Assembly: GCA_900088475.1 (NCBI GenBank)
Contig: FLMG01001983.1
Location: 54,116-118,115 of the forward strand
Length of the DNA: 64,000 nucleotides
Direction of reading: 5' to 3'
From: Hyphochytrium catenoides
Taxonomy: Eukaryota > Protista > Hyphochytriomycota
The translations under genes and the position numbers were made by a program. Shown here in pieces: positions 8,201 through 51,811 of the stretch (position 1 is its first letter; each line of letters opens with the position of its first letter). The notes under the pieces were generated by a model. The model was not told the DNA's origin, did no database searches, and worked only from the letters and a program-made list of their open reading frames with translations.

Positions 8201-8469
8201 TAAAGGCAGAAACTAGTGTCAAGATCCCTTCCTCTGTCCGTTCGTTATCGGACTATGAGGGCCGAGTTCGGCCACTACAGCTCCACGTAGTAGAGACCAT
8301 TCAGGCCACAAATGAGGCGATCTCGGCTGCCAGACTGGCTGGCTCGGATGTCTTTGGCCTGGTACATGCGAAGATCCGATCTGCAGGCTTCCTACACCTT
8401 ACAGTCAAGAGTCCAGATCCAAATTTCACACAGTACATTGCGCAGGCATTGCAGCAGAGTTTGAAATAA
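5271..8469 (+). CDS. AP4E1: AP-4 adaptor complex subunit epsilon (2 exons; intron 5343-5400)
   Basis: MSGSHLSRDFFDLVKAIGESKSKQ|EEDRII start joined across a GTGAG...TAG intron; Adaptin_N motifs (YVEMLGHDASFGYI, FDYHRIPAPWIQIRLL, CLEDPDESLKRKTLDLL, VLPVDASCEDIEVD); long Pro/Ser linker; C-terminal appendage (TPEFGNLWGSL). Confidence 0.95.
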
Positions 8470-17787: not shown

Positions 17788-18359
17788 TGCACACAGGGAG
17801 TCGTAGCTCTTGACTGTTCTAACCCGATAGGTGGTCAAACACTAATCTCAAGGACTTGAGAGCAGAGCTAACACTCTGCCTTCATCGCCGCGCAATCTTC
17901 ATTCAAGACCACTTTACCAATCCCAGATAGACACTTGGGGCTCTGAAGGTTTCCGCGAATTTTAGAGACTGGCCCCGATTCGAAAGTGACTGAAACATCG
18001 AATCTCGGGCGTCAGATTGAGCTTCCACGAAATTCAGTCACGGCGAGTTTGAGGATCAACAGAGCAAGAAGAACACCATTCGGGCACTTTTGGCGGGAAA
18101 AGATGTTAGCATTCTAATTCTGGATCTCCGCCTCTGTTGCTCTATTCTTCAAAATAAACAGCACAAAAGCCTCAATTATTACAGAAGCAATTCCAAGATT
18201 TTAGAGTTTACAAGTTATGGGTATCCAGATCTCACTTTTAGCAGGATTATCCGAGGACCTGGGTGGGTCTCGCCGTTATCGTTTTGTGATGATGGCGCTC
18301 AGAACAGAAATTTCTACTCCGTACTTGCAGAACCAGTTTCCGTGCGCCTCCAGCTGCCG

Positions 18360-30700: not shown

Positions 30701-33700
30701 GAATTGGGAGTGGCCAGACTCTGCGGCCGACTTTGAGCTTTAGCTACTGCGTCCTGAAAGGCCAAAGCCCCTAGTCCTTGAAGGTTGCCTTTAGAAGGCA
30801 GATTTTGTCCAACAGCTGTGGTAGGGGATGGTGACGAGGCCGTCCCAATGCGGGGAAGGATGGTGAGTGGTGTTGAAGTGGCAAAGGCAGCACCCTCCGC
30901 TGGCTGGGGACGTGAAGCAATGACCAGATTGCCTGTTGGGTTCAGCGAACCTGTCGCGGCACCTGGAGCAATCATCCTTGCCATTGCGGGCGATTGTTGC
31001 CTTACAGGTTGTTGGACGCCTGTTCGCTGCTGAGGATTCAAAAGCTGAGCAGAACCCAACCCCCCGTTGGCGAATTTGGAGTCCACCCCATCGATCCTAG
31101 GAGATGGCAAGCCTGTATTAGAGAGCACACTACTAGGTTCGCCACCTGGCTTAGGACCCATAGCTAGAATGTTTTCGATCTCCGCAACAATCTCAGGATG
31201 GCTCTGGCGAAGATGAGGGATCTGCAATACGTGAGAACAGTATTGAGGCCACTCCGCCAGCCTACCCTTGAACTGCTCCAGTGCAAACATTCCGAAGCGA
31301 AACATTTTGCCATAAGTTCCACCAGCAGGAGGCTTTTTCAAAGCATCCAGCACGTATCGAAGAGCAATCCCTAAAGTAAAGTTCGAGACGAGTTGGTGCT
31401 GAATGAGAGAACCAAAAAGGATGCCTGTGATCCGGAGTTCCTTTTCCGGGTATTTGTGGAAGAAGCGGTATTCATCAAACAGATTGTGAACCATACACTG
31501 AAAGATTTCCTGTAACATAACCACGGCGTCGTCAGTCCCTTTGAGGAGTCAATTTAAAAGGTTAGCCGCATCTAAGCGTCTTACCTGTTCCCGGGTGTCC
31601 TTGGAACCCTTGAAGCGCTTCAATGTCTCAATAACTTCGTCAATACTCTGTTCTCCCTTATAGATTTTTTGGAAGTATGCATCCGCTTGTTCTTCAATGT
31701 TCTCCGAGGAGCCCCTGGAAGTCGCTATAGAAAGCAATCCTCCAACCTCCCTATAAGTTGTGGTGAAGGCCTCACACAAAGCTGTGACTTCAGCTGCGGT
31801 GGCTGCATCCATGACTGAGAGACTTGCTTGTAAGCATTTGATAAAGCTAACCAGGTTCTCGGTTGAGAGAATCGCTTTCCCCATGACAGGATCTGAACGA
31901 ATAACCGCCCTGGGCTGCAGGGGCACATGGTAGAGGTTCAGAAATTTTATGGCAGCGTCTACGAACTGTTTCCCTTGGGCATTAATCCGCCCGACTAGCC
32001 ACTGTTCTAGCGGGACTAAGTCTCTATCGGCTGCAAAGCAAGCCACGGCGATTGAAAAGACCATCGACGGGGTGTCCAATAGGAATCGAAGACACTCTGG
32101 CAGCTCTCTAGCCAGATTGAGGATCGCCTGCAAGGTTGCTGGGGACGGGTCTTCCTGGAAGGCTACAATGGCTGCATTGATGACCACAGAGCGTCCTAAT
32201 GCAATCCCTAACGACCAGAGGTGCTTAAGCGTGGCATTGCCTAAAGGTTTACGAATATATCCGCCTTGTAGCACCTTCTCTAATAACTCCGTCCGCATAG
32301 GATGCTGACCACTAATGACTCCGGCTGTGTAAGCCAGTCCTATCAGAAGTATATCAGGGCAAGTGCGAAGGGCATCCTCAAAAACGGTCCTGGCAACCAC
32401 ATATCTCTTATCTGTGTCCGCCAGAAGCAGCATAGTGCTATAGAAATCGACTGATATCCAGCAGAAGTTCTTCGGCACCTGTGCTGAAAGAAGTTCAAAC
32501 AACACAAGACGATTCTTGGCTGAGCGATAGCTAAACAACTCAGCAGGAGCCGAAACAGAGAACCGCAAAAATGACAGCTGTCCATCCCGGTTATTCCACA
32601 GGCGAAAGAGAACGTCAACAGGGAACTCTGGAAGGCCCGACGAGCTTCGGTATGCCGAGATAAGGATGTTGAAGCCTAGTTGATCGGGAACAATGAATCC
32701 CGGATGATCCAAAGCCATAGCTACCGCATGCCAGTCCAAGTTGGCACCTAATTCCGTACGCAGAACGTGTGATATAACCTCAACGTTCCAGCTTGCAACC
32801 GAACCGTCGTCCCTATCATCACCGTCCCCATCTGGAAGAGTTTGTCTGCCTAAAGACATCCCCGTGTGTGTGCGTGCCAGCAATCCCAGCATCTTGCCAA
32901 TCTCCGTGGCAGGATTATCAGTCCTAGGCCAAGCCATGCGAAGGATGGTGGTGAAGGAGGCTGGACTCCTTGTGCAGGTATAGCCATACTCTGACATTAA
33001 GTCACTCAACGAGCGCACCGAATCCATGACCTCCTGAGACAGAGAGGAGATGACCCCAGCTGTCAAATTATCTTCGGCCGTGAACTCTGTCTTTGGAAAA
33101 ATAAAGGGTTGTAGGTCCGCGTTTTCGCCAATATCTGGGTGCGAACGTAACAAATGCGTGAAGAGCAGCCCCTCGTCTAACCTTTCAAATAGATCAGACT
33201 TCTCCGATAGTATAGATACCAGAAGGTGGAGTGGCCCTTTCGGTAGCCTTGGTGTGCTCCCCTTAATATACTGAGGCAGAGTGGTTCTCAACAGCTCAGT
33301 TCCAGCTGTGACACTGCCTCCTGCGGTTGACTGGGTCAAGGCAAGAGCAATAACAATTTGCTGGCTACAGGGAAGCTTCAAAAAGGCACAGAATAGGTGA
33401 AGCTCAGTAAAACTTAGTGATCTCCGATCCTTTCGCTTCGCAAAGCCATTTTCAACCGCTTGGCATATGAGGCTTGAGAAATTCGGCCGTTTTGATGCTC
33501 TCTCTAGTTCCGTCCCTAGATAGTGGAGTTTGGTGCCATCTTTCGGTTGCTGGGCTAGCAACTTTTCCTTTGAGGGCCAGTCAATTCCGCTAATCAAGCA
33601 CGAAACAAGAAATATCCAGGCCTCGTCGCCGTATAGGCCAATAATCTGTGGTGGTTAACAAGGAGGTTAAACGTGCAGCGTCGTGACATAACCTGCACTT

Positions 33701-34741: not shown

Positions 34742-37700
34742 ATGGAGGACGGAGAAGCCATCGAGCTTACGAAGCTCCCCGTCTTAGGGGCGGTCACTGC
34801 TCTGGTATTTTCTCAGGATGCTACGCTATTACTCGCAGGTAAGCATGTTTAGCAACATGACGGTCCTTTGGTGACTGACAAAACTTGCAGGCATCGGCTC
34901 TTACTTGCATGTGTTTAGAGTTCAGGACGGCCAGCGGTTGTACTGTCGACAGGTTCTTAGGCACAACCCTGTCCACCAAGTGGAGCTTGGTATGTTCCTT
35001 ATTTAGTATATATCATAGGCCAATTGAAGTCGCCTCTCACATCTCCGCCGTAGAGTACGATGTGGACCGGGCGATTGTGTTCGGGGGGAAGTCCCTTATC
35101 GTCCTCTCTCAAGTTCCAGAGGGGGCACTGTCTTGTGAACAAAGGAGACGAGTAGACGGCTCCTACGACATTCTTGACGTCCGGTACTGCCTCCAAAATC
35201 TGGACGACCTGATCCTGGCTGCTCAGCTCCTCCCGAAACGTCTGAATACAGATACAGAGAGGCTCGCCATCGGGTTTGCTCACAATTACGTGGAAATATG
35301 GTGCTTAGAAACGCTACGGATGGTGCATAAAGTTGTTAGTTCAGTCCGGTGTCTACTCTACAGCATGCAATTCGCTCCACAGTGTACGGCCACTGCCGCT
35401 CCAGGAACAGCCTGGCCTGACCTGATGATAGCTTCAGGTACTGTCTTTTCTAAAGTGGTTCTGTGGAGTTTGGAGGGAAACGGAGAGACTCTCCATGCCC
35501 TAAGCGGCCATCTAGGGGTCATTTTCCGCATCCAGTGGTCAAGTGACGGCTCCATGTTAGCCACATGCTCCGATGATAGAACTATTAGGCTCTGGAAAAG
35601 GAAGGATGTAGGCCAGACCCATTTGTCTGCCCTAGAAGAGGCATGGACTGGTTGGGGCCATAAGGCTCGAGTCTGGGACGTACAATTTGCGGCCATTGGT
35701 CTCATATCGGCCAGTGAGGACGCTACTCTCCGTGTCTGGGATTGGTCTGGAACTTGCCTGGCCGAGCTGGTCGGTCATGCAGGGAAAAACGTGCGTCGTG
35801 TGGCGATATCCGCTTCGCTCTTGCTCCCTGTAGTTGCTTCCGGAGGGGATGACAGTGCAATCAAGCTCTGGGATCTACGACGACACCTCATCTCGAATGC
35901 CATGACAGAGACAGCTGCCGCCACTATTGTGCCACCTGAAGTTCAGGACACCACTCTAGGTGAGTCTGGAATCGTGCAAAAAGAGAAGAAAAGCACATCA
36001 GGGCGAGCTGCCTTTTAAAGAGAGAAAACGGGCAGGAAGAGGGTCAACAGTGCATAGTGGGGCATAGATAGGAGTGCGAAGGTACTTAATCTTTATCTTG
36101 CAACAGAGGAAGCAGGAGCCGCGGAGCACGTAGAGAAGTTTAGTCGAGACAGCGCGAGGGCAATGGCCATAACGAATGGGGGAACTATCCTTTACGTGGG
36201 CTTCAGTAGCACTGGGCTCTGGGCCTACGACATGACGGACGCTAAATGGCGCGCCGTGGGCCTCACGGTAGGCGTTGAGCCTCTCGCTTTCTCCCGGGCA
36301 TAGACTATATGCATCTTTGTCTCTCCATCGGCTCTTGTAGGGACTTTTTGATAGTCCCTTCTCTACCGTTGCTTGATATGACAAAGACTATCCATGTACA
36401 TGGAGCTTACATATTCTCTGGAACTCTACAATGTCCATCTTATGTTGCTAACACTATTATCTTCTGCTCTGTGACTCTATTGTGTTTATCGTCTGCCTTT
36501 CAAGCGTTACGATGAAGACTGACCTCTTTTATATAGTTCACACACCGAGAGAGCGTAACCCACGTCACGATCCCTCCCAAGGACAGGCATGTCTTAGCTG
36601 GGACCTCCCGAGGTTCCATCTTCATCTTTGCTATCCCTATTGCGGAGGCAGATCGGAAAGACCAAATTAACAATGAACACATTCTTATGGCTTCTGTTGC
36701 TGGTGCGCATCAAGGAACCATCACGCTTCTCCACTACATGCATCAGCAATGTGATGGCAGGATGATAGAAGAAACACTTTATTCGAGTGGGGCGGACGGC
36801 TGCCTCAGGCAATGGGGCTTGCCGTTTAATAATAAAGACGAGCGCGTAGATGCTACGACGAAGGAATTAGTTCCGTTGGCGTGCTATCGGACCGCTTGTG
36901 GCAAGTCTGTAGCATTTACAGCGCTTGGCATCTCCTGCGAGTTTAACATCGTTGTTGCTGGGGACTCACGAGGGAGATTGATGATTTTTAAGCTAGCTGA
37001 GCAAGAGCGTTCAATGCTAAGGGCAGAGGGGGTTGAGATTCTCCCGTACCGTAAGTTCTACGCGCATGGAAGGGACCAGGTAATGCTCTGGCCTCTTCTC
37101 CTCGAGCTTCCACTCTCAATCGCCGTCATGTCATGTCTTCGAACTGCCCTTCAACTTCATAGCTAACAAGGGTCTTTCTGGGCGTGTGAACTAGGTCTCA
37201 GCAATCAAGATAGTGCGGAACTATATCTACTCTATAGGACATGATGGCTATATCCAGTCCTACGTTATAGAGGGTGACGGCCATGTTTCTTTAGAGGCTA
37301 ACTCGGATATCGATAGTTCAGACAGGATGTATGCCCTGAGGCCGATTGGTAGGGTAGCGACGCATCCCATCTCTATCCCTCGACAGATCTGGATATCTAG
37401 CTCAGGTCAGCTAATTCTGGGTGGCTACACTGGGAGCGATTGCATTGTCTGGAACGTTACGTCGAGCCAACAGCTACTTAAGGCACATGCGGGCAACTGG
37501 AGGCGGCCACACGCCCTGTGGATCAGCGAGACGGATCCTTTACAGAGTCTGACTTTGGTCCATGCCCCTCCCCCTCCAACCAGAAAATCCCCAGCATATC
37601 TCAAAACATTGACAACAGTTCAAAGTCTGGCTTGTTATCGTAAGACTCCCGACGCAACACTCACTGACGTAGGAGATTTACCCGAGATTGCAGAGTCAAC

Positions 37701-39765
37701 GGCTGCGAATGAGGCAAGTTGTTCCAGATGGTTTGCTAGTGCTTCCCTTCACGTACCTCTACATGGCCGCATCATACCTGCAGCCCTATGGCTGAAGCCT
37801 GGATTGGTGGCAACGGGGAGCGAGGATAATGCTGTCAAAATACTTTATTATCAGCTAGAGGAACTGTCAGAAGCCGCGAGCGCCCCACCTCCTACATGCT
37901 TAGGAATGGCATCAGGCCACCTGGCCGGCATCCGAGCGATGGCCTTGTTGCGGAGTCGACCAGAACTAGATAAGCCCGCCAAGACAATGCCAAGCTTATT
38001 CTTCACCGCTGGGGGAAGGAACATGATCAAGGTTTGGCGTTTACCAGGTGGCCCAAATATTTCGGGAGCACGAGTTGAGGACGTTGGCACCTATGAGAAG
38101 GACCACCCCGTTCAGGACCAACGACTGACCTCCATTTCCTGTCATGTACTGCCTGATCAAAGGAGCGAAGATGCGCACCGCTGCTGCGTCGTAGTGGCAG
38201 GGGATTCGGAGGGTTCGCTCATCTTCCTCATCTACTGCGACCTCTCCAGAAGTTTGCTAGAAATAGGACAGACTTGTCACAGCCTCAGACCCATACTAGC
38301 GTTGAAGGTTGTGTCAACAGCAGGACGTTTTTTTGTCCTATCGGGTTCAACTGATGGCAAGGTCCACGTAACAGACTTCTCAAGCTGTGTGGCGCAACTG
38401 CCGCAGAGGTAATGTCGTGTCGATTGCACCTGACCCTGCTGATCTCCTTTCTCTTCACTACTCTCGCATGAACTTCCCTAGAACGTTTTCTCTCTGAATT
38501 GCGGACATTTCCTTGTGTCTACCTTTCTTTCCCGTCACCTCTCCTTCATCGTCATCAGCGTGCGTGCATTCCTCGTTTCTTAAGCTTTTAGTACCATGTC
38601 TGGTGGTACCACCGGCGTTGGCCAAAGTAGGTAACATGTATTATCTAGGTCATCCGTTCGCAAATTCTCTTAGGTCTTACGCTCCTTCTTATTAGTTCTC
38701 AATTTTTTTTGGCCCATAGTTCACGTTGCACGTATTTACGAGTGTTTTCCAGTCATCTATCTTCGGAAGACTCTCTGAGTGCTGTTCGGTCCCAGTTTTC
38801 CATGATGCCACCTATAATAGTGCTGGACTGCCATCAGATGGGCGTGAATTGCCTTGATGCTGCTTGGATTCCATGTGATGATCAGAACAAAAAGAGCCTT
38901 CTAATTGTGACCGGAGGCGATGATCAGGCACTTGGGCTTGCAAAGTTCGCCCTGTCAGAAGACGTGAGTAACGTATGCACGACCGCCTGTTGGTGCTTAG
39001 TTGCCCTTCAGCTTACTTTTGTCTTGAAGGGTGAGGGTATGTGGACTTACAGAGCTTGTTATTTTATTCCATGAGTTGGCATGCGATTGATATCCTTGTT
39101 GCTTTTACGGTATCGTGCTTATCTAGTCTCTGTCTCTCTCTAGGCCCCTCTCACTCTCCTTTGGCAGCGGTATCTTCCCAGCGCCTCTAGCTCGGCACTG
39201 AAGGGTATCTCACTCCATCAGATGTACATCTTCGCAGTTGGCTACGACCAAAGGCTTACGGTCTGGAAGTACACTACCATAGACGAGGAGGCCGAAGCGG
39301 CAGTAGAGCCTTTGTACCGCGTTACCGAGACCATAGTAGATGTTGCTGATGTCCACAGCCTCGATGTGGTCGAGAATGAACGGTATGACCTTTGGATCAA
39401 TGTTCGATGTGAGGAGAGAAAGATGGAGCCAAGGGCGGGTGAAAGTGACAGACAGCGTGAAGGCCAACGGATACACTCTACTCCAATTTTACCGAGTCTA
39501 GAAGACGAGGAGGTTGGCCTTGAGCGTATCGAGGGGTTCTCATAGGAATAAGATCAGGGAAGTCAGGGCAAAGGGTGAGGAGCGTGGACCTCTAATAACG
39601 AGTTTGGCTGGTTTCTAATCCGTCTCGTGTCCCTCTTCACGCGCCAACCTTCTCTTGTCTTCTGATGGTAGCGGCCATTTTGAAGCAGTCATCACAGGCC
39701 ATGGACTTCAAGTGCTTATCTATTCACCAGAGTACCCTCACGGGCACCACGAAGCCTTTACATGA
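34742..39765 (+). CDS. WDR6: WD40 protein WDR6/Trm734 (tRNA 2'-O-methylation cofactor), 9 exons
   Basis: Family motifs RCLLYS, IASGTVFSKVVLW, GHLGVIFRI...CSDDRTIRLW, GWGHKARVWD, AGNWRRPH, HGRII, TGSED, HQMGVNCL...TGGDDQAL, VGYDQRL, VDVADV, GHGLQV; eight GT-AG introns in phase. Confidence 0.88.
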
Positions 39766-40572: not shown

Positions 40573-42521
40573 CTAGGACCGCCAGGTATCCTTTGGTACG
40601 TCCCTACGCAAATCTGGGAACAGCAAGGATCGATCCCGCCGTAAGGAAACAAGCTTTTTGTTCTAGTCCCCTTGTGTCGTTATCGTACGCCTTTGGTTGC
40701 GAAGCTCTGCTCTAAAGCGAAGCAGTACTCGACAGTTCTGTATGACATGCGGATGAAGCTTATCGAAAGTGATTGAGCTTCGGCAAGCGGCGGATGTGAG
40801 CGAGTTAGTGTTGGACATCTCATACAACAGACTTTCTCGTCTTTCCTTGCGCTGAGAGGGACTTTCGCGCCGTTCCTCTGTCTCTCTCCTACTCTGTCTC
40901 CCACGATGTGGACAAGGTCTGTAGCTTTGTCCACAGAAGGTGCAGACCATGTTCTCTGTCATGTCTCCTCTGTCTCGTTAGGTTGAACCTTTGTACCCGC
41001 ACCTCTTTGCACTCTTTGTCCTGCTGTTACATTCTCTTTTTGGTGTGTGAGAGTCTTTCTTCGGCGCTGTTCCTTCCCTTGTCTCTCTTCGGAAACTATT
41101 GTACAGTGAAATCTCAGATGCATTGCAGTCCCGGTAATAATATGCCCGCTGCCACTGGAGCAGTACGGCTATAAGGGGAACAATTTAGTAGTAGTAATAA
41201 AGGTAGGATAAAAGCCCCAGTAAGCATAATTGTCTAATCGCCGTTTGGCTCATCTTTTGATCGGTTAGCGCCACAAGACATTACCAGAAGTATAGCTCTG
41301 TTGGTTTTGTGGAACAAAGCAGAGAGTTTTTTGGGAGGCAAAAACACAATCAAAAGAGCTGTACGACAGTAGAACGACAACGTAGTACATGTACATGTAG
41401 CCCTATGGGTGCATGACGCCACAGCGGTCAGGGCAAACCGCCTATGTGCTGAGTACAGTACTGGGGGTTGGCCTTGCAAGGTAGGGGATGGCTGCGGACC
41501 CCCTGGACGGCTAACACCCTTGCCCCCTTGCAACTCTCGAGGTTTGTACCACCGTGTACAGCTGTAGTGTGCTTGTCCTTGCTTCTTGAGGAATATAAGG
41601 AGGGACACAAGCCTTTCTCCCAGGTCTTTGGTGCCCCTTGTGCATTTGCCTTACTCACGCTCATCCAACTTTTCTTATAGGTGACATCGTCAAGGGGTGA
41701 TAACAATCATTGGGGAAGTAACATCAAATTCAATAATAGTCCGAGGGGTGGTTTTGTATAGCGCTTAGTAAGCCTGATCCTGGTCCGCTAACATTCTGCC
41801 CATCTTAAGGTATATAAGCGTTAGAGAGCTATTCTTACCTAATCATGAACCTCACTGTAACTCCCATATGCTCCTCCTAGCGGCTTCTGATGTTTGACCT
41901 TCAAAGTCTAAACCTGTTCCGCCTCCTGTCATGCTCCACCTGCCCGTGAGAGAGAGTGCCGGTTCACGGTAACACCTGTATGAAGGGAAAGGAAGAGCGG
42001 AGCCATAGTCCTCTACTTTAGCCCTTGGTTCATACAACAACACACTTCGGGGATACTGTACATTCTTTTGTTGTCCAAGATCAGCGTCACAACACCCTGC
42101 CGCTCCTTAGCCTAGCGCCTTGATGAGAACTCGGCGATAGAACGGAGGAGCAGGTGGGCCTGGTCAGAGACTGGCAACGGATGATCATGTCCTGTCGACA
42201 TTGGCTAGTGCAGCAGGTGGACGCAGATCTATTGCCACTTCTTCTGCTATAATAGACCACCGTCGCGTGACTCATTGGTAGGAGTGGTCAAAAAGCGCAT
42301 GGAGCCAACCTGGACATCCGAACCAAGTTCAACTTGGTGAAGGTGATGTTCAACAGCGTGGGTTTGGAGGCTGGGGCCATGGATGTAGATCAGGGCCAAA
42401 GCTATAGCAGGTACTACTTTGACCTCCCTCGTCGCTGCCAAGATCTCTTGGCCGCAAGTCGCTGTTTTTCGGTGCGGACACAGTCTTGGCTAATGAGTTT
42501 TGAGGCCATACCGCTCTAGAG

Positions 42522-45500
42522 ATGGGTCAAGATCGAAGTAGTAGCTCTTTTCCAGAGCAGTCTGCTGCCAATGAGAGGAGTACGCCCTTTTCAGGAGGAG
42601 CCGGTCTGACGCAGCAACCAGTGGAGGGAGCTGGACCGTGGAAGGCGACCGAAGATCCAAACTCTGCTCCAATTGTCGGCATAGAAACGAGGACCTCTGG
42701 TGGCAGCTGTCAGCATACAGCGGGACAAGCGGCATCAGTACAGAACATGCCTACGCCAGATATGAAGAGGCGAGGGCTACCAAAGCCGCTCAAGTCCACC
42801 ACCGTCGCTGTTTTCTTTCTGACATTAGCGCAAATAACCACCCTACTCCCCTTCCCAGATATCTATCAGCGTCTCTCTGCAGCTTGTATGCTCTTTGCTG
42901 GAGGTGCCGCTTCTTATCTTCTAGTGCTGGGTTTCTGCTGCAAGGTGTTCCCCAGGAACACCATCACGCCCATCCTACTCGACCGGTTTTTCCATCCTAT
43001 CAGAAACTGGCAGCAGGAGCTTCTTAGGACATTCTTGGAGCTCTTCTTGGGTTTCTTGGTGCTAGTGTCGACCTACACATACTTCCAGAGCTTTCCCCTT
43101 GCTCTCTCAAGTAGCACTATTATTGTCTTAGGCCTCTCAGCAAGCTTTGAAGCAAAAAAGGTCCCTCTCTCCCAGATGGAGAGGCTTCTCACAGCCTCGC
43201 TTATCAGCTCTCTTCAGGTTTCGGGGTCCAAGCGCTCACTTACCTTCATTAAGCTGGCTATTCTCACAATCTGCCTTACGGTGGTACCGTATGCTTTATT
43301 CAGTGTCGCGGCAGAACTCCAATCAACTACAATGTCTACGTTAATCCCAGCTAAATTTGAAGGCGTCAGCGTAGCGTATCTACTCATGCTGATGGTGGCC
43401 GCATCCTTCATATGTGCAGGAGAGCTTCTAGTTCACTGGGGACCAACGCATTCGATAGGACTTATAGTGAGGGAAAGACTGATCAATAGCGGAAGAAACT
43501 GGGAATACCATACAGTCCGCTCAGTAATTGAGGTTGTAGGGTCTTTGGTGGCTACCTGGGTAACATATGCCAGCTTTGAAGACGCCTTGTTATCGATACA
43601 GCTAGGGACTCTGGCGGGTATCATGCTCGTAGTGCTTGGAAACTGGTGGTGCACCCGGGGATTGGTTAGATCCGAGGAGGAAAGGATAAGACTGGAAACA
43701 GAGGTTACTGGACAAGAGGAAGACACCACCTTGAGAGGATTAGTTGGAACTCGCCCGGTCCGAGAGAATGAGCATCAGTTCAAGGTCCTCCCGTTACTCT
43801 GTCTTGTGGGCTACGTCGGAATAAAGGCAATCAACGTCATCTTCCTCAACTTCCACGACATTGCTCTTGCTATCGTTCTTACTACGTTGGCCTGTGTTCC
43901 CCTCATCTTCCTGACGGAGTTTCTCCTTCTCTGGCCGCCTACACGCCTGATCGGTCAGGTACTGCAGGACCGGTGGCTGCTGGCCAGGCGGAACTGGCAG
44001 CAGTTCCCCGTTCGGTCCTTCATCGAGGTGGGCTGCTGGCTAGGTGTTATATACGGTACTTATGCCTTATACAAGGACCTGGTTACGGCCATAAAAGTGG
44101 GAACGCTATCGGTAGTCATTGTTGTCATGACAGGGGAATACCTCCTTCGCTGCAGCAACCTCGCAGGGCGGCAGGGAGAGATGAGTGCAAACACATCGAA
44201 ACTTGTTCCCTTGTTATGTCTTCTAGTGGGCTATGTGGGAGCCGTAGCGTTTAACGTCATCTACACTTCTCTCAGCCGCTTCGACGTAGCATTCATCCTT
44301 GCTACACTAGTTAGCATCGGCTGCATAGGGTTAGGCGAGCTTGTTGTCTCCTGCAAGCCTACGTTTTGGGCAGGCTTTGTTTTGCAGGATCGACTGATAA
44401 ATGTCAAGGACAACTGGAAACATTTCCCGCTTCGGTCTCTTATTGAAGTGGGCATATGGACATCTGTTGCCTACGGTTCTTATGTCATCTACTACGATCC
44501 TTTCGCTGCCATACAGCTGGCTACTCTCTCAGGAATGATTGTAGCTCTCAGCACTGAGTACTTTCTCCCAAAGTCTGCCGCCACATTAGTGAATGCCGGG
44601 GTCTTTTCTCCCGCCTTCACCTCGGAGGAGGAGACAGCGAGTGACCCTAACATTCCTCCTTTCTCTATTCTGGCGCTCGTGGCCTATGCCATCTGTGGGG
44701 CCATGTACCTCATTTATGAGAACTTTCGGGGCTTAGAATTGGCGTTTGTGCTTGCGACACTTGCGGGTGTAATGTTCGCCCTTGTCAGCCAGTTGTTGAT
44801 CATGTGGAGACCCACGAGAACTGTAGGGGCCATCTTGCAAAGTAGAGTCGTTCACTTTGTCTCTAATTGGCAAGATGCACCTATACGGTCCTTTGTGGAA
44901 CTCGGGAGCTGGCTTTGTGTCATCTATGGCTCCTATGCCATCTTCCATGACCTCATGATGGCAATACAGCTCGGAACCTTTTCTGCGATGGTGGTGGTCT
45001 TAGGAGGAGAGGCGCTTAAACGTCGCTTCGGCTTATCTCCAATTGTGCCCTCCATGAGTGAAAGAGCCAAAGAGGAGACGGAGCCGCAAAGTAGGATGTT
45101 CCCTTTGATCTGTCTTTTTGGGTACGTGGGACTTGGAGCGTTTAATTTCATCTTCGACAATTTCAGAGCTATAGAGATAGCGCTCCTTCTCTCCACCATG
45201 ACCGGCATAGCTTTCATTGTCGTGGGAGACATTTTTGTGAGCTGGGGCCCCACGAAGACTGCAGGCACAATCCTTCAGAAAAGGGTGCTTAACATGGGGC
45301 TCAACTGGAGACTCTTTCCACTTCGGTCGTTCGTGGAGACCGGCTTCATGGGAGGCGTAACGTACGGGAGCTATGCCATATATTCTGATCTGGCAGTGGC
45401 AGTACAATTAGGTGTACTATCCACTATTCTTATAATCTTAACGGGGGAGAGTCTGGGAAAGAATGTCCAAGTACTCAAGCTCCGACTTCAGGAGAGAAGA

Positions 45501-47400
45501 GGCAAGACCGACGGAGAGGCCGATAAGAATGGAAAAGACCAGGCCAACTCTTACGAGAGTGAAGATGAGGCTGAAGATGAGAGCACGTCTGAGTCAAAGA
45601 TACTCCCTCTTCCCCTGATTTCGCTATTTGGTTTCGTGGGTGTAGTTGCTTTCAACACAATCTATTCAAACTTCAAGAACATCAGAGTGGCATTCTTTTT
45701 AGCAACGGTGACAGGCGTCCTCTTCGTGGTAGCTGGCGACCTCTTCGTTATCTGGTGTCCTACAAGGCAAGCGGGCTTGGCGCTGCAGAGTCGCGTGATC
45801 CATGCTAAGGTCAACTGGAACCAACGGCCCATTCGATCTCTTCTCGAAATCGGAGGGACTGTGCTTGTGAGTTGGTCCACATGGTGCTATTACCATGACA
45901 TCATCGCTGCAGTGCAGTGGGGCACAATAGCTGGAATAAGCGTCGTTTTGATTGGGGAGAGTGTCAGGAAGCGCCTGAGGAGCATTGAAAGGCGGCTGGA
46001 GAACGGACAATTCTCGGACTCCAGGTACATGAGGCTTCACCTACTTGCCTTGCCTTCATCCATGCCCACATGTTATTTCCTCTCCTCATGCTGTTCTTTT
46101 CGGGCGTGGTCTGTATGTCTGCAACTCGCCCTTGCGCCTTGTCTTTTACTTATTTGTAAGACTCGCCTATGTCACACCTTAGATCTAACTCTCCGCATGC
46201 TTCTCTTTCCCCCATGTTTATCCGCACCATCCGATTCACGTTCATTCGCACGAACCCCAATCTTCTCCCGTCTTACGATGTTATACTTCCAGCGATTCGC
46301 CTCTTCTCAGCTTGCCGTACGATACACTGTTTGAGGTTGCCACATACCTCACTCCCGAAGAGCTATTAGAGGTCCGGCTGTGCAATAAGCGGATAAATCA
46401 GCTACTAACCGCAGAAGCCAGCAGGTATTGGCGGCACGTTTCAGAGAAGATCAGAGGAGTTATGCGCACATCAGCGGTCGTGGAGGTGCGTTCCACACTG
46501 TGCGAAGTCATAAAGACTCTTAGTGCATATTCCAGAAGGCTCTGGAACGATAAGAGGTAAGGAGCCGTCAGAGCCAAATTCTTTGCTGCGTGGCCCGGGT
46601 CACCGGTTGCCGCTTGCACTGATCCTTTAGATATTTCCTATTCGTGCACTCTTTTCGTTATGAGAGTCTGTTTGTCCATCCTCAAGCTACCCACCAAGCT
46701 CACACCCTTGACGATTCCTGCAGATTCTCTCTCTTTCCAGTCCAACTTAGCCGGCACTCGCAGCAGTCCCTACAGTGGGTCCACGTGAACGCCGCTTGGA
46801 TAAGGGAGCAGAACATGGTCCCGATGACTGGCGCGGTAGTCTGGTACGAAGTCTCCAGGGGAGATCCGCTGCCAGCCGGGCACTTGACTGATTTCCACTT
46901 GCTCATACTTTCTTCTCCATGTCCTTGTTTAAGTTCTCTCCTCTGTCGTATGTGATGCACGGTTGTGTCCACAAAGGGTGCTTGCGGTCGGCCATTTTTT
47001 AGACTACTCTGTATACTGACACCTCTCCGTCCCTCTATGTTTAGTCTGGAACCAGGCCAAGCAGGCTATGAGATTTTCCGCCACATCCCGGACAAGGTAA
47101 GTGTACAGAAGGGCTGAAGGGGCATGAGTCAGCATTAGGAGCTAACACATCTTCCTGTAGGCGACACTCGGAATCACCATAAAGACTGAAGGAGGGATTC
47201 GCCGCATCTGCATTCCTGGGCCACTCTATACTAAGCTGCAGAAAGACCCTGTGAGCTTTGTGGCCTCCGCCACAGTAGGAATGAGCCGCCCTCTTTCCAT
47301 GTTCGGCGTTCTTACGCTGTTGGTTTTCACAATGACTCTAATTGTCACAGGCCACTGCCTTTATGACTTTGCAATGGGCCTGCTAGATAAATTTTATTAG
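42522..47400 (+). CDS. Uncharacterised polytopic membrane protein: seven ~4-TM repeats, F-box, C-terminal TM (~1386 aa, 5 exons)
   Basis: Exons 42522-46024, 46311-46556, 46724-46843, 47045-47096 and 47161-47400 total 4161 nt in frame. Seven copies of a (W/C)xPT..G.(I/V)LQxR.....NW...PxRS..E core lie among hydrophobic helices. Exon 2 gives the F-box pattern SLPYDTLFEVATYLTPEELLEVRLCNKRINQLL. Confidence 0.85.
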
Positions 47401-47619
47401 GCCCATTCAGTGCTATTTATAAAGTTCAATAGATGACCTCCTCACACATTTGAGGCCCATACTGTTGGCTCATAGAGTGTCCTGCTGTGCTCATACTTTG
47501 TCAGCACCTCACTTTCCAGCTCTTCATGGTCCTGTACAATGACGTCTCGAGACCAGTCCATCTTTCTCACACTATTCATCTATCTCTGCCATTCTCATAT
47601 GTACTATTGATGTTCATCA

Positions 47620-50473
47620 TCAGGAGGTGGCGACCTCCGCTACTGCTATTGGTCCGGCCCCTGCACTCTCGAAATCTGCTATCGTTTTCGCCTCCATGAC
47701 CCGCTTTGGAGGCCGCTTTTTGCTAAAAAAATCTTCACCTGGAAGCTCACAGGCATCTGGAGTTTGGCAGAGCGCAGGCAGAGATCCGCTCTCCAACTGA
47801 ATGACAATGTAGAAAGAGACAAGCATTCACAATGGAGATCAGAGCGGTGTACAGATAGGAAAGACAGCCAGGAAAGCAGATGACATTCCAGAAAGGGATT
47901 TTGCTTCTACACCTCCTCCTCTTCGCTTTGCGAGGCTCTCGTACCTTAGTGAAGAAGCGGACTCCAGTCTTCTTCACAACCTCCTCGATCGGTACTATGA
48001 ACTTCTCCAGCGGCATGTCAGCAGGAATAGCAGCATTAGGCAGTACAAAGCACTGCGCGGAGAGTGAGAGTGTAAGGTCCTCTTTTGTCTCGATTGCTTG
48101 CCTAAACACTCTTCTCTCGTAGGCGAGCGTTTGATCTGGACTTATTTCCGCGGGCATCCGAACGGCAAGGACGATCTTAAAGAAGTGGGTCGGAACAGCA
48201 ATATGTCCGTCCTCTCCTATCACTTCGTACACCATCCGACGCCGCCCTGCTTCGTCAGGAGGCTGAATCATGAACAGCAAGTAGAGCCACATGCGGAAGA
48301 TCGGAAGGAGTCAGGGCAAAAGGTTAGGAGAGTTAGAGCTGCGTGGAGTCAATTCTAAGGGCATGGTGCCAACGAGTGAATAGCGATTGTCGACAAAAAG
48401 GTCAAATGTAGGTACTGCCAGTCAGAAGCAGTAGTTGTCGGCACCCTCTAACAGAAACCTAATGTACTCGCAGCATGCCAAAGACACCAACACGCAAATA
48501 ACTGTACAGAAGCGTACTCTTGGCTTGAGGTGACAAGATGGATCAAGGCTCGGTTCCGCTGAGACTACGTCAGCTGAAGGCCTCTTCGTATCCTACCTGT
48601 GGCAGCCAAAGGGGTCCTGAGATGACGTACACGACTCCTACGTCTTTGTTTCTATTGACTAGCCGGCGAGTAAACTCTTCCAGTCTAGCCCAATAGTCGC
48701 GGTTAAAGCCTTTCCCAACTTGAGGACTGATGTTGGTCATGTAGAAGGTTTCGTCCATTGCCTCTTGACTTATAGAGGCGCCGGCTAAGGAGGGAAAGAG
48801 TCCATCAGCAGGAGAAATTTGGGACAGGCAGAGATAGCGTACTGGGGAGAACAACGATCGAGGAGAGATCCTTATGTTTAGAAACGAAGTGAAGTCACGG
48901 TGGGAGAAACAGTAGTCAGTAGTGAAGTTCCGACCTCCCAGTGGATGCGTTCAAAGGGCTGTCAACTTTGTGTGGAAGCCTGACGTAGATACGCCCGATG
49001 ATGGAACAGAAGAGAGATTAAGAGGCCACCACAAGGAAGAAGAGCCCATTAGATAGCAGTGCTGCGTAGAGAGAGGAAAGAGAGGCAGAAGATAGAGAGA
49101 AGGGACTGTCTAGAGCCTACTAACCTGCCGGTGCAAGGTGTCCTCTGTCATAGCCGGAGCGGAAGAAGTCACTGGGCCTCACCTGGAAGAGCTCCAGAAT
49201 ATCTGGATCAGGTCTGAAGACAGAACGGCTCCGAGTGGGGGAGGACTTTGATCCGTCTCCAGTACTTTCTCCCGCTTCTCCTTCTGATCTAACTGGGTCT
49301 TGTACCTCTTTCTTCTTCACTCGTTTCGTCAGCCTCTCCACTGTGAACAGTGGGTTCCTCGTCCTTTCGCAGAAAGAGAGAGAGGACGCATTAGTTAGGT
49401 CCTCCAGACTTTCAAAGACAGTAATATAACAATTTTCTGGGCCTGTATCCTAAGTAGCTGAGGAACGGGGAGGGAAATGAACTAAGGGAGAGAGTATAGA
49501 TAGACAGACAGAAAGAAAGAGATGAGCGCCAGAAATAGAGAGGAGAAACTTAGGTATTCGTGTGCATGGGTGTGGAAGAGAGAGAGAAATACAGTGAGAG
49601 AAAAAGAAGAGAGAGAGAGAGAGAAAAGAGAGAGAGAGAGAAAGAGAGAGAAAAAGCGAGGGCGAGAGAAAGCCAGTGAGAGAAGAGAAGAGAGAGAGAG
49701 AGAAAAAGAGAAAACGGGAGAGAGACGAGAGGGCGAGAGAGAGAGAGAGTGAGAGAGAGAGAGAGAGAAAGAGAAAGAGAGAGAGAGAAGACAGAGAGAG
49801 AGAGAGTATGAGAGGGAGAGATAGAAAGACCAGATAGGCAGATGACGGCCTCACCGCACATCATAGGCCACGGAGTAGCTAGTCCGATGCAGCAGAGGCG
49901 CTACAATCTCAGGAGCCCCAAAGATTGAGATGCCTTGCCAAGCTTCTGAGCTTATCTCTTTACTTCTTTTCTCTTCCTCGTTGTCCTTCTTCTCTCTCCT
50001 TATGGCCGCTTCTTCATTTGGTCCCCTGGCAAGGTCGCTCTTCTTAAGTCTTTCTAGTGGCTGTGGGCGATCGCTGCCAGCTCTGTAGCCGAAGTGATAA
50101 CCAAGATACGCGCTGACGAGGGCCCTGGAAGTAAGATGTTGGGCTTAGACAACGGTGTTGCTCAGCGGAATCGGGCCAAAAAGATAGAAAAAGAGTGCAA
50201 TAAGATAAGAAATATTGAACAGACTTTGGTCTAACAGGAAACCTGGATGGGAAACAATAAGCAGCCCGGGTCTCAACGGAGGAGAAGGGCAAATGAAGGA
50301 TAGAGGAAAGTTGAGATGAGGACCTTGAGAGGGGAGACTAAGACGGTGAAAGAGGAGAGGGCGCGCGGGAGAGAGAGAGAGAGAGCGAAGAGAGAGGGTG
50401 AGAAAGAGAAAGAGAGAGAGAAAGAGAGATGGGGGAAGACGGCAGGGGCGAGATAGAAGAGAGAGAGAGAGAG

Positions 50474-50510
<37 letters not shown>

Positions 50511-51279
50511 CTGCAAATTGGAACAGGGAAGAGAGAGAAGGACAGCGATAGGGAATAGAGACCACTATGCAATTCGAAGAGACTCACCCTAAGAGGCCCA
50601 AACTCGCCAATGCGGAAGAGGAAAATGGCAAAGCTCTGGCCTCTTCTCGTTCATTCTCTGCCTGAAATCCTCTTCTCTCATTCCGCTTGCCTGTATCTCT
50701 ATTTCTCAGTCTCTGTCCTCCCGGGTCTCTTCCTCTTCGCGCATAAGAAAGTGAGCGGCTGTGCTGCTGCCCAGAGTGTGTGGGAAGGGTGAGNNNNNNN
50801 NNNNNNNNNNNNNNNNNNNNNNNNNNNNNNNNNNNNNNNNNNNNNNNNNNNNNNNNNNNNNNNNNNNNNNNNNNNNNNNNNNNNNNNNNNNNNNNNNNNN
50901 NNNNNNNNNNNNNNNNNNNNNNNNNNNNNNNNNNNNNNNNNNNNNNNNNNNNNNNNNNNNNNNNNNNNNNNNNNNNNNNNNNNNNNNNNNNNNNNNNNNN
51001 NNNNNNNNNNNNNNNNNNNNNNNNNNNNNNTCTTCTCTCATTCCGCTTGCCTGTATCTCTACTTCTCAGTCTCTGTCCTCCCGGGTCTCTTCCCCTTCGC
51101 GCATAAGAAAGTGAGCGGCTGTGCTGCTGCCCAGAGTGTGTGAGAAGGGTGAGACGACGGGCTACGTGGGAGCCTTTCAGTCCCCAAGGATTTGAAGGAG
51201 AATAAAGGCCTGAGAGACGGGCACCCCAGCGGCTGGAAGAGCTGCCCTGCAGCCTTCTCCCTACGCCGATAACTTCCAT
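47620..51279 (-). CDS. Endonuclease G/EXOG-like (Nuc1 family) DNA/RNA nuclease, probably mitochondrial, 6 exons
   Basis: SYSVAYDVR|TRNPLFTVERL, catalytic SGYDRGHLAPA, ETFYMTNISPQVGKGFNRDYWARLEE, VISGPLWLP, IAVPTHFFKI, FVLPN, LCQTPDAC. Arg/Ser-rich N-terminus then hydrophobic ALASLGLLG|ALVSAYLGYHFGY. Exon 1 is disturbed by the gap at 50794-51030. Confidence 0.9.
49520..49830. repeat. (GA)n-rich microsatellite tract in EndoG intron 2
   Basis: Directly visible; CT-rich on the coding strand. Confidence 0.95.
50369..50510. repeat. (GA)n/(CA)n microsatellite in EndoG intron 1
   Basis: gagagagagagagacacacacacacacagagagagag visible. Confidence 0.95.

Positions 51280-51505: not shown

Positions 51506-51509
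<4 letters not shown>

Positions 51510-51552
<43 letters not shown>
51510..51552. repeat. Perfect (GA)n microsatellite of about 21 units upstream of EndoG
   Basis: Directly visible. Confidence 0.97.
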
Positions 51553-51557
<5 letters not shown>

Positions 51558-51811
51558 AGAAAGAAGGCGCCGATGAGCTGAAAGAAGCCAGCTCCAGGCT
51601 CACAGGGAATGAGAAAGAAGGATCAGAACTACAAGTAATGACCTCGATGCGGAATACATTTGGGTAGGTGATGGATTAGTCATCGCTCTGTATAACTCTA
51701 TAATGACTGACAATCAGGTACTTTACAACAGCTTGGGCGGCTAATCTATAGGAGAGTATCTTGCAGTACAGTGCCAACAGAGTTGAACGGACAGACAGAG
51801 CATGGAGAAGT

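What the first reader, a model, noticed from the sequence alone, without database searches (positions are those of the whole stretch)
42522..47400. Seven-repeat (~28 TM) membrane protein fused to an F-box: candidate membrane-embedded SCF substrate receptor
Seen in sequence: the 3.5-kb first exon encodes seven copies of a 140-170 aa unit, with NW cores at 43005, 43497, 43992, 44412, 44865, 45303 and 45813. Consensus: PL(L/I)xLxGYVG..AFN.I(Y/F).NF....(L/V)A..L.T..G......G(E/D)...WxPT...G.ILQxR.....NW...P(L/I)RS.(I/V)E.G......YG(S/T)Y..(Y/F).D...A(I/V)QLGT......GE. Each unit has about 4 hydrophobic helices, with charged linkers between units. The ORF track reads into an intron at 46025 and hides the spliced F-box (46311-46410) and a final hydrophobic helix near 47300. 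Established: F-box domains bind SKP1 and normally pair with soluble WD40, LRR or Kelch substrate-binding repeats at the C-terminal side. Inference: a transmembrane repeat array replaces the soluble solenoid, with the F-box downstream, which could let SCF recognise substrates or ligands inside the bilayer. Conserved R, NW, RS and E residues suggest a repeated ligand or ion site. I cannot assign the repeat to a named family.
Basis: partly seen in the sequence, partly recalled or inferred. Interest (0 to 1): 0.85.

Follow-up and report, generated by a model that had tools for sequence, protein, structure and literature searches.

The report
Membrane-embedded F-box protein, seven repeats
This is a real, conserved gene for a protein that crosses the membrane about 29 times and carries a ubiquitin-ligase docking motif (an F-box) on its cytosolic side. 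Its repeated membrane module is an undescribed domain that other protists fuse to lipid desaturases, which points to ubiquitin control of membrane-lipid enzymes, though no function has been tested.

Summary
A profile built only from units of unrelated desaturase-fused proteins finds exactly seven domains (32-121 bits; shuffles reach at most 5.1).

No RNA data were found. The fusion is supported by:
- a metagenomic homologue that carries the whole layout in one uninterrupted ORF;
- orthologues across oomycetes;
- strain variants eight times denser in the predicted introns, which also hold all three indels.

AlphaFold gives each unit two transmembrane hairpins plus a cytosolic amphipathic segment with the invariant R…NW…RS..E signature (pLDDT 86.6). 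No Pfam, NCBIfam, PDB or Atlas match was found.

The module is rare: 149 representatives among 1.84 billion proteins. It usually sits in front of cytochrome-b5 front-end desaturases, and once in front of a TLC domain. A second subfamily pairs two units with another F-box.

Best reading: an integral-membrane SCF receptor or adaptor tied to lipid-enzyme control. SKP1 binding, substrates and ligand are untested.

The parts
42522..46024 (+). Exon 1: N-terminal 89-aa hydrophilic region plus all seven 4-helix membrane units (aa 1-1167 and two bases of codon 1168)
   Evidence: ORF; the GT donor at 46025 is read directly; the exon model translates without a stop
42789..43169 (+). Unit 1, the most diverged (aa 90-216). 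It keeps R, NW, R and E of the signature; T and S are replaced (PRN, RT)
   Evidence: groups with first-position units of homologues
43269..43661 (+). Unit 2 (aa 250-380)
   Evidence: clade with second-position units, support 96
43767..44156 (+). Unit 3 (aa 416-545)
   Evidence: modelled with unit 4, pLDDT 86.6
44184..44576 (+). Unit 4 (aa 555-685)
44640..45029 (+). Unit 5 (aa 707-836)
45078..45467 (+). Unit 6 (aa 853-982), the most consensus-like
45588..45977 (+). Unit 7 (aa 1023-1152)
46025..46310 (+). Intron 1 (GT..AG, 286 bp)
   Evidence: 4 SNPs and 2 indels in the second DNA run
46311..46556 (+). Exon 2: F-box (LPYDTLFEVATYLTPEELLEVRLCNKRINQLL..., 46312-46431) and the start of the C-terminal domain
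   Evidence: Pfam PF00646, 21.9 bits against cut-off 20.5; the family profile hits cyclin F, FBXO4 and FBXW7 F-boxes; tblastn to P0001, E 2.7e-11
46557..46723 (+). Intron 2 (GT..AG, 167 bp)
   Evidence: 4 SNPs and 1 indel
46724..46843 (+). Exon 3: conserved 'LQWVHVNAAWIREQN' part of the C-terminal domain
   Evidence: tblastn to P0001; alignment A4
46844..47044 (+). Intron 3 (GT..AG, 201 bp)
   Evidence: 7 SNPs. Pythium oligandrum has an intron at the matching place, just before 'FQPGDAGF'
47045..47096 (+). Exon 4: 'LEPGQAGYEIFRHIPDK' motif of the C-terminal domain
47097..47160 (+). Intron 4 (GT..AG, 64 bp)
47161..47400 (+). Exon 5: end of the C-terminal domain, C-terminal membrane helix (47293-47364), 11-aa tail and TAG stop (47398-47400)
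   Evidence: the helix is conserved in homologues and modelled as a helix in P0005

Best explanation
The locus is one five-exon gene for a 1386-aa integral membrane F-box protein.

Shown:
- It has seven tandem copies of a ~128-aa module. Each copy is modelled as two transmembrane helical hairpins joined by a cytosolic amphipathic segment that carries the invariant signature T-x3-G-x5-R-x6-NW-x5-RS-x2-E.
- The units are followed by a profile-positive F-box, a conserved ~165-aa domain of unknown fold and a C-terminal membrane helix.
- The layout is old. Units at the same position in different species are each other's closest relatives. Orthologues occur across oomycetes and in this organism, which lies outside them.

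Inferred from charge distribution and helix parity: the N-terminus, all inter-unit linkers, the seven signature segments, the F-box and the C-terminal domain face the cytosol, and almost nothing protrudes on the far side.

Inferred from what F-boxes are known to do: the F-box docks SKP1-CUL1-RBX1, making a membrane-embedded SCF receptor or adaptor.

Inferred from domain fusions: the same module sits directly in front of cytochrome-b5 front-end desaturases (sphingolipid delta-8 type by automatic naming) in dinoflagellates, thraustochytrids, euglenids and marine protists, and once in front of a TLC domain. I therefore take the module to be a bilayer-level lipid-binding or enzyme-binding element. 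The F-box protein most likely couples lipid state, or lipid-enzyme occupancy, in an endomembrane to ubiquitination of membrane enzymes such as desaturases. The C-terminal domain may contribute to substrate choice.
For: Gene model:
- All introns are GT-AG and the product aligns colinearly with Aphanomyces stellatus P0001 (aa 636-1380 to 665-1366, E 2.7e-135).
- P0003 carries seven units, F-box, C-terminal domain and helix in one uninterrupted ORF, L006:6001-9615.
- Variants from a second DNA run number 15 in 718 intron bases against 11 in 4161 exon bases (Fisher p 4.5e-7). All three indels are intronic and 7 of 11 exon SNPs are synonymous.

Repeats: the independent HMM finds seven domains, and the unit tree shows positional orthology.

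F-box:
- Pfam above cut-off in the window, in P0001 at 28.8 bits, in P0179 and in 7 of 60 long members.
- The family profile's only PDB hits are F-boxes, with cyclin F at E 1e-4.
- The modelled F-box aligns to those of FBXO42, cyclin F, Cdc4 and FBXL17.

Topology: K/R residues are concentrated on the side of the H3/H4 segment and the linkers. The module's C-terminus abuts cytochrome b5 in the desaturase fusions, and by general knowledge of front-end desaturases (not tested here) that domain is cytosolic, which fits the same orientation.

Module fold: pLDDT 86.6, pTM 0.74.

Lipid link: 29 of 60 long members carry Cyt-b5 and 26 carry FA_desaturase. P0084 carries a TLC domain in a single ORF seen on 6 contigs.

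Second link to SCF: the P0027/P0026/P0024 subfamily has two units, a canonical F-box, a different soluble domain and a C-terminal helix. Its unit nests among two-unit and desaturase-class units.

Signature: R, R and E are 98-99% conserved across 126 non-window units, and all seven window units keep them.
Against: - No transcript evidence was available. The run search returned DNA runs only, so the splice junctions rest on homology and variant pattern.
- The window's own F-box score is only just above Pfam's cut-off, and the usual tryptophan of helix 3 is I/V. SKP1 binding is untested.
- Topology is predicted, not measured.
- The lipid link is guilt by fusion. The module could equally be a general anchoring or oligomerisation device.
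- The conserved C-terminal domain, not the membrane array, may be the substrate receptor.
- No ligand, substrate or cellular location is known.
- The fold has no known relative from which to borrow a mechanism.
Confidence: 0.55

Rival explanations
1. The membrane array is only a large anchor or scaffold. It fixes the protein in a particular membrane and perhaps forms a platform. Substrates are chosen by the conserved soluble C-terminal domain, as in ordinary F-box proteins. The protein is still an SCF receptor, but not an intramembrane one.
For: A conserved ~165-aa domain sits in the canonical position after the F-box, with modelled pLDDT of 85-95. The second F-box subfamily also has a soluble domain after its F-box.
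Against: An anchor needs neither seven units each kept at its own position over long times, nor an invariant polar signature in every unit. The module also occurs without any F-box, in front of lipid enzymes.
Confidence: 0.22
2. The 28-helix array is itself a transporter, channel or lipid-moving device, for instance a covalently linked ring of seven 4-helix subunits. The F-box either controls the protein's own turnover or binds SKP1 outside a cullin ligase, as Rcy1 does in yeast recycling.
For: Many large-pore channels are rings of 4-helix subunits (general knowledge, not tested here). pTM 0.74 for the two-unit model may mean that neighbouring units pack in a defined way, but I had no coordinates to check this. 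F-box proteins with roles outside SCF exist (established knowledge).
Against: There is no similarity to any transporter or channel family by sequence or fold. Relatives work with one to four units, which argues against an obligatory seven-fold ring. No model of the whole array was made.
Confidence: 0.15
3. Gene-model artefact: the repeat ORF and the F-box exon belong to separate transcripts, or the F-box match is chance.
For: No RNA evidence. The F-box score in the window is near the threshold.
Against: A relative has the whole layout in a single uninterrupted ORF. The same order is found in at least ten oomycete species. The splice is in frame, and the variants and indels are confined to predicted introns. 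F-box hits recur across the family.
Confidence: 0.03

Closest known systems
Canonical F-box proteins (FBXW, FBXL, FBXO; e.g. cyclin F, FBXO4, FBXW7, Cdc4)
   Same: A ~40-residue F-box with the LPxE(I/V)L...L..EDLL...CK.. pattern, recognised by Pfam and by profile search of solved structures. A further conserved domain follows it.
   Different: The F-box lies after 28 predicted membrane helices and before a C-terminal membrane helix. There are no WD40, LRR or Kelch repeats. The domain after the F-box has no known fold. From memory, known membrane-attached F-box proteins use one helix or a lipid anchor (FBXW7-beta, FBXL2, Rcy1), not a multi-pass body; my paper searches found no multi-pass example.
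Multi-pass membrane RING ligases of the ER (Hrd1, Doa10/MARCH6, RNF145, TRC8)
   Same: The logic is the same: a large multi-pass membrane body carrying a cytosolic module that brings in the ubiquitination machinery. Several of these respond to membrane lipids or to membrane-embedded degrons (established knowledge).
   Different: No RING domain and no sequence or fold similarity. Recruitment would go through SKP1-CUL1 rather than direct E2 binding. This is an analogy, not membership.
Unit-bearing cytochrome-b5 front-end desaturases of protists (e.g. Durusdinium trenchii CAK9027333.1, Thraustochytrium sp. LLF1b, Entosiphon sulcatum, Tara Oceans P0002)
   Same: They share the same 4-helix module with the same R/NW/RS/E signature, in one to four copies at the N-terminus.
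   Different: They end in Cyt-b5 plus FA_desaturase instead of an F-box and C-terminal domain. The window protein has neither haem-binding nor His-box domains.
Oomycete orthologues annotated only as 'F-box domain-containing protein' or 'hypothetical protein' (Aphanomyces stellatus Aste57867_12710, Saprolegnia parasitica SPRG_19874, Pythium oligandrum Poli38472_000857, Achlya hypogyna 'F-box protein', Phytophthora fragariae PF005_g22160)
   Same: Same order of parts, colinear alignment at 33-38% identity, and similar intron places near the F-box and before the FRHMPDK motif.
   Different: In several oomycete copies the middle units are eroded, so only five or six are detected. The window copy and the metagenomic P0003 and P0004 keep all seven intact. 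I found no published functional study of any of them.

Membership tests
F-box protein (SCF substrate receptor) | F-box motif recognised by a curated profile | tested here: met
   PF00646 at 21.9 bits against cut-off 20.5 in the window. Orthologues score 26-28.8 bits. The family profile hits only F-boxes in the PDB, with cyclin F at E 1e-4.
F-box protein (SCF substrate receptor) | F-box exposed to the cytosol or nucleus, where SKP1 is | tested here: inconclusive
   Four helices per unit and K/R enrichment on the linker and H3/H4 side predict a cytosolic F-box. This is a prediction only, with no experimental topology.
F-box protein (SCF substrate receptor) | Binds SKP1 and assembles with CUL1-RBX1 | not testable with these tools
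   No complex prediction or binding assay was available, and the organism's SKP1 is not in the window.
F-box protein (SCF substrate receptor) | A separate substrate-binding domain | tested here: inconclusive
   There are two candidates: the membrane array and the ~165-aa C-terminal domain. Neither matches a known binding fold.
Multi-pass membrane RING E3 ligases (Hrd1, Doa10, RNF145) | RING or RING-CH zinc finger | tested here: not met
   No Pfam family other than F-box in any part of the protein.
Any characterised transporter, channel or 4-helix membrane family | Sequence or fold similarity to a described family | tested here: not met
   Pfam found nothing at E up to 1, and no family recurred over 53 unit pairs at E up to 10. 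NCBIfam gave only PsiE at E 0.13. A profile search of PDB sequences found nothing relevant. Foldseek on the PDB gave E of 0.47 or worse. VIA-align gave a maximum Z of 6.5, on hairpins only. The Atlas gave TM of 0.36 or less.
Cytochrome-b5 front-end desaturase | Cyt-b5 haem domain and three His boxes | tested here: not met
   Absent from the window protein and present in class-B relatives. Only the N-terminal module is shared.

The most novel reading that the evidence does not exclude
The seven-unit array is a bilayer-level sensor or receptor. Each unit's cytosolic-face R/NW/RS/E site binds a lipid head group or the membrane part of a lipid enzyme, as hinted by its natural fusion to delta-8-type desaturases and a TLC domain. 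The F-box then hands the bound enzyme to SCF. That would make this the first multi-pass, intramembrane substrate receptor of a cullin-RING ligase, and a protist counterpart of sterol- or lipid-regulated ER ligases.
Probability: 0.3. Interest if true: 0.85.

Novelty: new variant of a known kind. Interest (0 to 1): 0.62.

Why it matters
SCF ligases are thought of as soluble machines whose receptors use WD40, LRR or Kelch domains. From memory, the membrane-attached F-box proteins known so far hang on by one helix or a lipid anchor, and my paper searches turned up no multi-pass example. A receptor that is itself a 29-helix membrane protein, conserved across oomycetes and a sister lineage, would extend cullin-RING ligases to recognition inside or at the face of the bilayer.

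The repeated module is also a domain family with no Pfam entry and no structural relative. Its repeated fusion to front-end desaturases gives a directly testable link to the control of membrane lipid unsaturation or sphingolipid metabolism. Oomycetes include major crop and fish pathogens in which lipid metabolism is a drug target area, so an oomycete-wide regulator of this kind is worth knowing about.

Tried and rejected
- Transcript evidence. The single run search (kind 'any') returned three DNA runs and three tiny unrelated runs. Laying them gave no joints, so splicing is not shown by RNA. I should have asked for kind 'rna'.
- Named families for the unit. Pfam, NCBIfam, PDB sequences, Foldseek on the PDB, VIA-align wide and the ESM Atlas (by features and by shape) gave nothing above noise. 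The PsiE hit (E 0.13) and DUF6526 (4 of 53 pairs) are not significant.
- Fold of the C-terminal domain. No match; only the F-box part finds F-boxes, at Z 3.5-4.6.
- Synteny. LUC7 lies next to the gene in both P0003's contig and Pythium oligandrum. tblastn of P0003's neighbours found nothing in the window.
- P0096 (Pythium insidiosum; units, an anoctamin fragment and a CH domain). I judged it a probable merged gene model and did not use it as evidence.
- The UniRef name 'Dolichol kinase' for the Prymnesium two-unit protein has no Pfam support.
- Literature. Five full-text searches found no paper on multi-pass F-box proteins, on these oomycete genes or on the N-terminal module of these desaturases. 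Absence from the held library does not prove the family is undescribed.
I could not inspect unit-unit packing or pockets, and no whole-array model was made.
Full report
**1. What is in the sequence**

The + strand carries an ORF from 42522 to 46334 (1270 aa).

Seeding on those cores gives seven units at aa 90-216, 250-380, 416-545, 555-685, 707-836, 853-982 and 1023-1152.

To avoid circularity I built an HMM from 28 units taken only from desaturase-fused proteins of other organisms. It finds exactly seven domains in the window protein. Scores are 32-121 bits and i-E 6e-12 to 2e-39, whereas 200 shuffles of the protein never exceed 5.1 bits.

**2. Gene model**

Exon 1 ends at 46024, before a GT at 46025. 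An AG ends at 46310, and the next exon continues in frame with S-LPYDTLFEVATYLTPEELLEVRLCNKRINQLL.

Homology to the Aphanomyces stellatus protein P0001 fixed three further exons. The model is:
- exons 42522-46024, 46311-46556, 46724-46843, 47045-47096 and 47161-47400;
- all introns GT-AG;
- a 1386-aa product with no internal stop;
- aa 636-1380 align colinearly to P0001 665-1366 (E 2.7e-135).

No RNA run was found. My one run search used kind 'any' and returned DNA runs only, so the splicing rests on three other lines of evidence.

(a) The metagenomic homologue P0003 carries seven units, an F-box, the C-terminal domain and the final helix in one uninterrupted ORF, L006:6001-9615. The fusion therefore exists in nature without any splicing assumption.

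(b) A second DNA run of the same species label differs from the window at 26 substitutions and 3 indels in this stretch:
- 15 substitutions fall in the 718 predicted intron bases and 11 in the 4161 exon bases (Fisher p 4.5e-7);
- all three indels are intronic;
- 7 of the 11 exon changes are synonymous, and the other four are conservative or lie outside the helices.

(c) Pythium oligandrum's orthologue has introns a few residues before its F-box and immediately before 'FQPGDAGF'. The latter matches the window's intron 3.

**3. The F-box**

- The window's exon 2 scores 21.9 bits on PF00646 against a gathering cut-off of 20.5 (E 1.6e-4).
- P0001 scores 28.8 bits and Achlya hypogyna's orthologue 26 bits.
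- Seven of 60 long family members pass at E up to 0.001.
- A profile of 13 family F-boxes searched against all PDB sequences returns only F-boxes: cyclin F at E 1e-4, then FBXO4 and FBXW7.
- In a model of the P0005 C-terminal part, the F-box segment aligns structurally to the F-boxes of FBXO42, cyclin F, Cdc4, FBXL17, FBH1 and FBXL2, at Z 3.5-4.6 and 18-27% identity.
- The usual tryptophan of the third helix is I or V in this family.

SKP1 binding is inferred, not shown.

**4.

Between the F-box and the last helix lies a ~165-aa region conserved in all full-length homologues. Its motifs are RSL(I/V)YEA, LKWV(Y/F)(L/I)NA(D/A)WIR.Q, GF.VFRHMPDK and VP...Y.K.Q.DPFSFV.

In the AlphaFold model of P0005:1130-1376, the core of this region has pLDDT 85-95 and is a small alpha/beta domain. 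It matches nothing in the PDB or the Atlas. It sits where F-box proteins usually carry their substrate-binding domain.

**5. The membrane module**

AlphaFold2 on window units 3-4, with 53 aligned unit pairs, gave mean pLDDT 86.6 and pTM 0.74. Each unit is modelled as:
- helix 1 and helix 2, joined by a 3-residue turn;
- two short helices (PTR..G..LQ.R and NW);
- helix 5, which starts P(L/I)RS..E, and helix 6, joined by a 2-residue turn and ending in GE.

Hydropathy agrees with four membrane helices per unit.

K/R residues concentrate in the short helices, at the start of helix 5, after helix 6 and in the linkers. The two tight turns carry about one or none. By the positive-inside rule, the N-terminus, all linkers, the seven signature segments, the F-box and the C-terminal domain are cytosolic, and almost nothing is exposed on the other side.

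Independent support comes from the desaturase fusions. There the module's C-terminus joins directly to cytochrome b5, and by general knowledge of front-end desaturases (not tested here) that domain is cytosolic.

Across 126 units from other proteins, the two arginines and the glutamate are 98-99% conserved, NW 86-88% and G 90%. All seven window units keep R, NW, R and E.

**6. No known family**

| Search | Result |
|---|---|
| Pfam, window protein | no hit at E up to 1 |
| Pfam, 53 unit pairs | no recurrent family at E up to 10 |
| NCBIfam | only PsiE at E 0.13 |
| Unit profile against PDB sequences | nothing relevant |
| Foldseek against the PDB | best E 0.47, TM up to 0.26 |
| VIA-align against 48,161 chains | best Z 6.5, on single hairpins |
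| ESM Atlas by shape | TM up to 0.36 |
| ESM Atlas by features | scores up to 0.69 |

**7. The family and its partners**

A profile of 14 units searched against 1.84 billion representative proteins found only 149 hits. Local domain mapping and Pfam sort them into classes.

(A) About seven units, then F-box, C-terminal domain and helix. Members come from:
- Aphanomyces stellatus, A. euteiches, A. invadans and A. astaci;
- Saprolegnia parasitica and S. diclina, and Achlya hypogyna;
- Pythium oligandrum, 'Pythium' brassicae, Globisporangium splendens, Nothophytophthora and Phytophthora fragariae;
- metagenomes.

They are named only 'hypothetical' or 'F-box domain-containing'.

(B) One to four units, then Cyt-b5 and FA_desaturase. 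This covers 29 and 26 of the 60 long members. Examples are Durusdinium trenchii (auto-named delta-8 sphingolipid desaturase), Thraustochytrium sp. LLF1b, Entosiphon sulcatum and Tara Oceans contigs with intronless ORFs.

(C) Two units alone, for example in Prymnesium parvum.

(D) Two units plus a TLC domain, as one ORF seen on six marine contigs.

(E) Two units, a canonical F-box (LPSDVLHLILEHCDADTLR...W), a different ~250-aa domain and a C-terminal helix. These are single ORFs in several marine assemblies. Their unit nests among the two-unit and desaturase-class units, not among class A (support 100).

The module is thus joined to an F-box in two well-separated subfamilies and to lipid enzymes in many others.

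**8. Age of the array and the organism**

In a tree of 130 units, window units 1, 2, 3, 5, 6 and 7 group with the units at the same position in P0003, P0004 and the oomycete proteins. In these groups the window unit lies at or near the base (see also the score matrices). The seven positions were therefore in place before these lineages split and have been kept separately since.

The window's SMC3 (14110-17838, minus strand) is 48-52% identical to that of every oomycete alike, and 44-47% to ochrophytes and plants. The organism is therefore a stramenopile next to, but outside, the sampled oomycetes; this is an inference. Earlier notes of this scan on the same genome also call it oomycete-like.

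**9. How it most likely works**

Shown:
- one gene;
- a seven-fold 4-helix module;
- an F-box by profile;
- a conserved C-terminal domain and helix;
- conservation across lineages;
- fusion partners of the module.

Inferred:
- cytosolic F-box;
- SKP1-CUL1 recruitment;
- a role at or in the bilayer tied to desaturase or sphingolipid enzymes.

The nearest functional analogy is the multi-pass RING ligases of the ER (Hrd1, Doa10/MARCH6, RNF145). That is analogy only, because no RING domain and no similarity were found.

Rivals:
- The array is merely an anchor and the C-terminal domain is the receptor.
- The array is a transporter or pseudo-heptameric channel whose F-box controls its own fate or binds SKP1 outside SCF.
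- The gene model is an artefact, which is now unlikely.

**10. Verdict**

Orthologues are already in databases but uncharacterised. I found no paper on them or on multi-pass F-box proteins. I rate it a new variant of a known kind (F-box receptor) built on an undescribed membrane domain. Interest is moderate to high, limited by the absence of any functional or transcript data.

Noticed in passing
window 47747-48292 (-): An ORF with a DNA/RNA non-specific endonuclease domain (PF01223, E 2.5e-9) lies tail-to-tail about 350 bp after the F-box gene's stop. It probably has further exons.
   Followed up: partly
window 49577-49829, 50369-50510, 51509-51564: Long (AG)n/(GA)n microsatellites explain the strong GC and AT skew there. 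A 500-bp stretch at 50500-50999 drops to 30% GC.
   Followed up: partly
window 14110-17838 (-): An intronless 1243-aa SMC3 cohesin gene. It is 48-52% identical to all oomycete SMC3 proteins alike, which places the organism beside but outside the oomycetes.
   Followed up: yes
window 5449-8469 (+); 25095-33597 (-); 34885-38412 (+): An AP-4 epsilon adaptin gene, a multi-exon CNOT1 (Not1) gene and WD40-repeat ORFs. These are ordinary housekeeping neighbours with no lipid or ubiquitin link to the F-box gene.
   Followed up: partly
L006:4979-5863 and L007:3869-5130: A LUC7 gene lies immediately upstream of the F-box gene both in the metagenomic contig of P0003 and in Pythium oligandrum. This looks like conserved synteny, and it is absent from the window.
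   Followed up: partly
P0084 (L011:360-2513) and P0027 (L008:1459-3378): Marine protist ORFs join two units to a TLC (ceramide-synthase-type) domain, or to a second kind of F-box with its own C-terminal domain and membrane helix. The source organisms are unknown.
   Followed up: partly
window 42400-47600 against run X2: The second DNA run of the same species label differs from the window at about 0.5% of positions here. Some sites appear in about half of the assembler's depth (46569-46931), which suggests heterozygosity or a second strain.
   Followed up: partly
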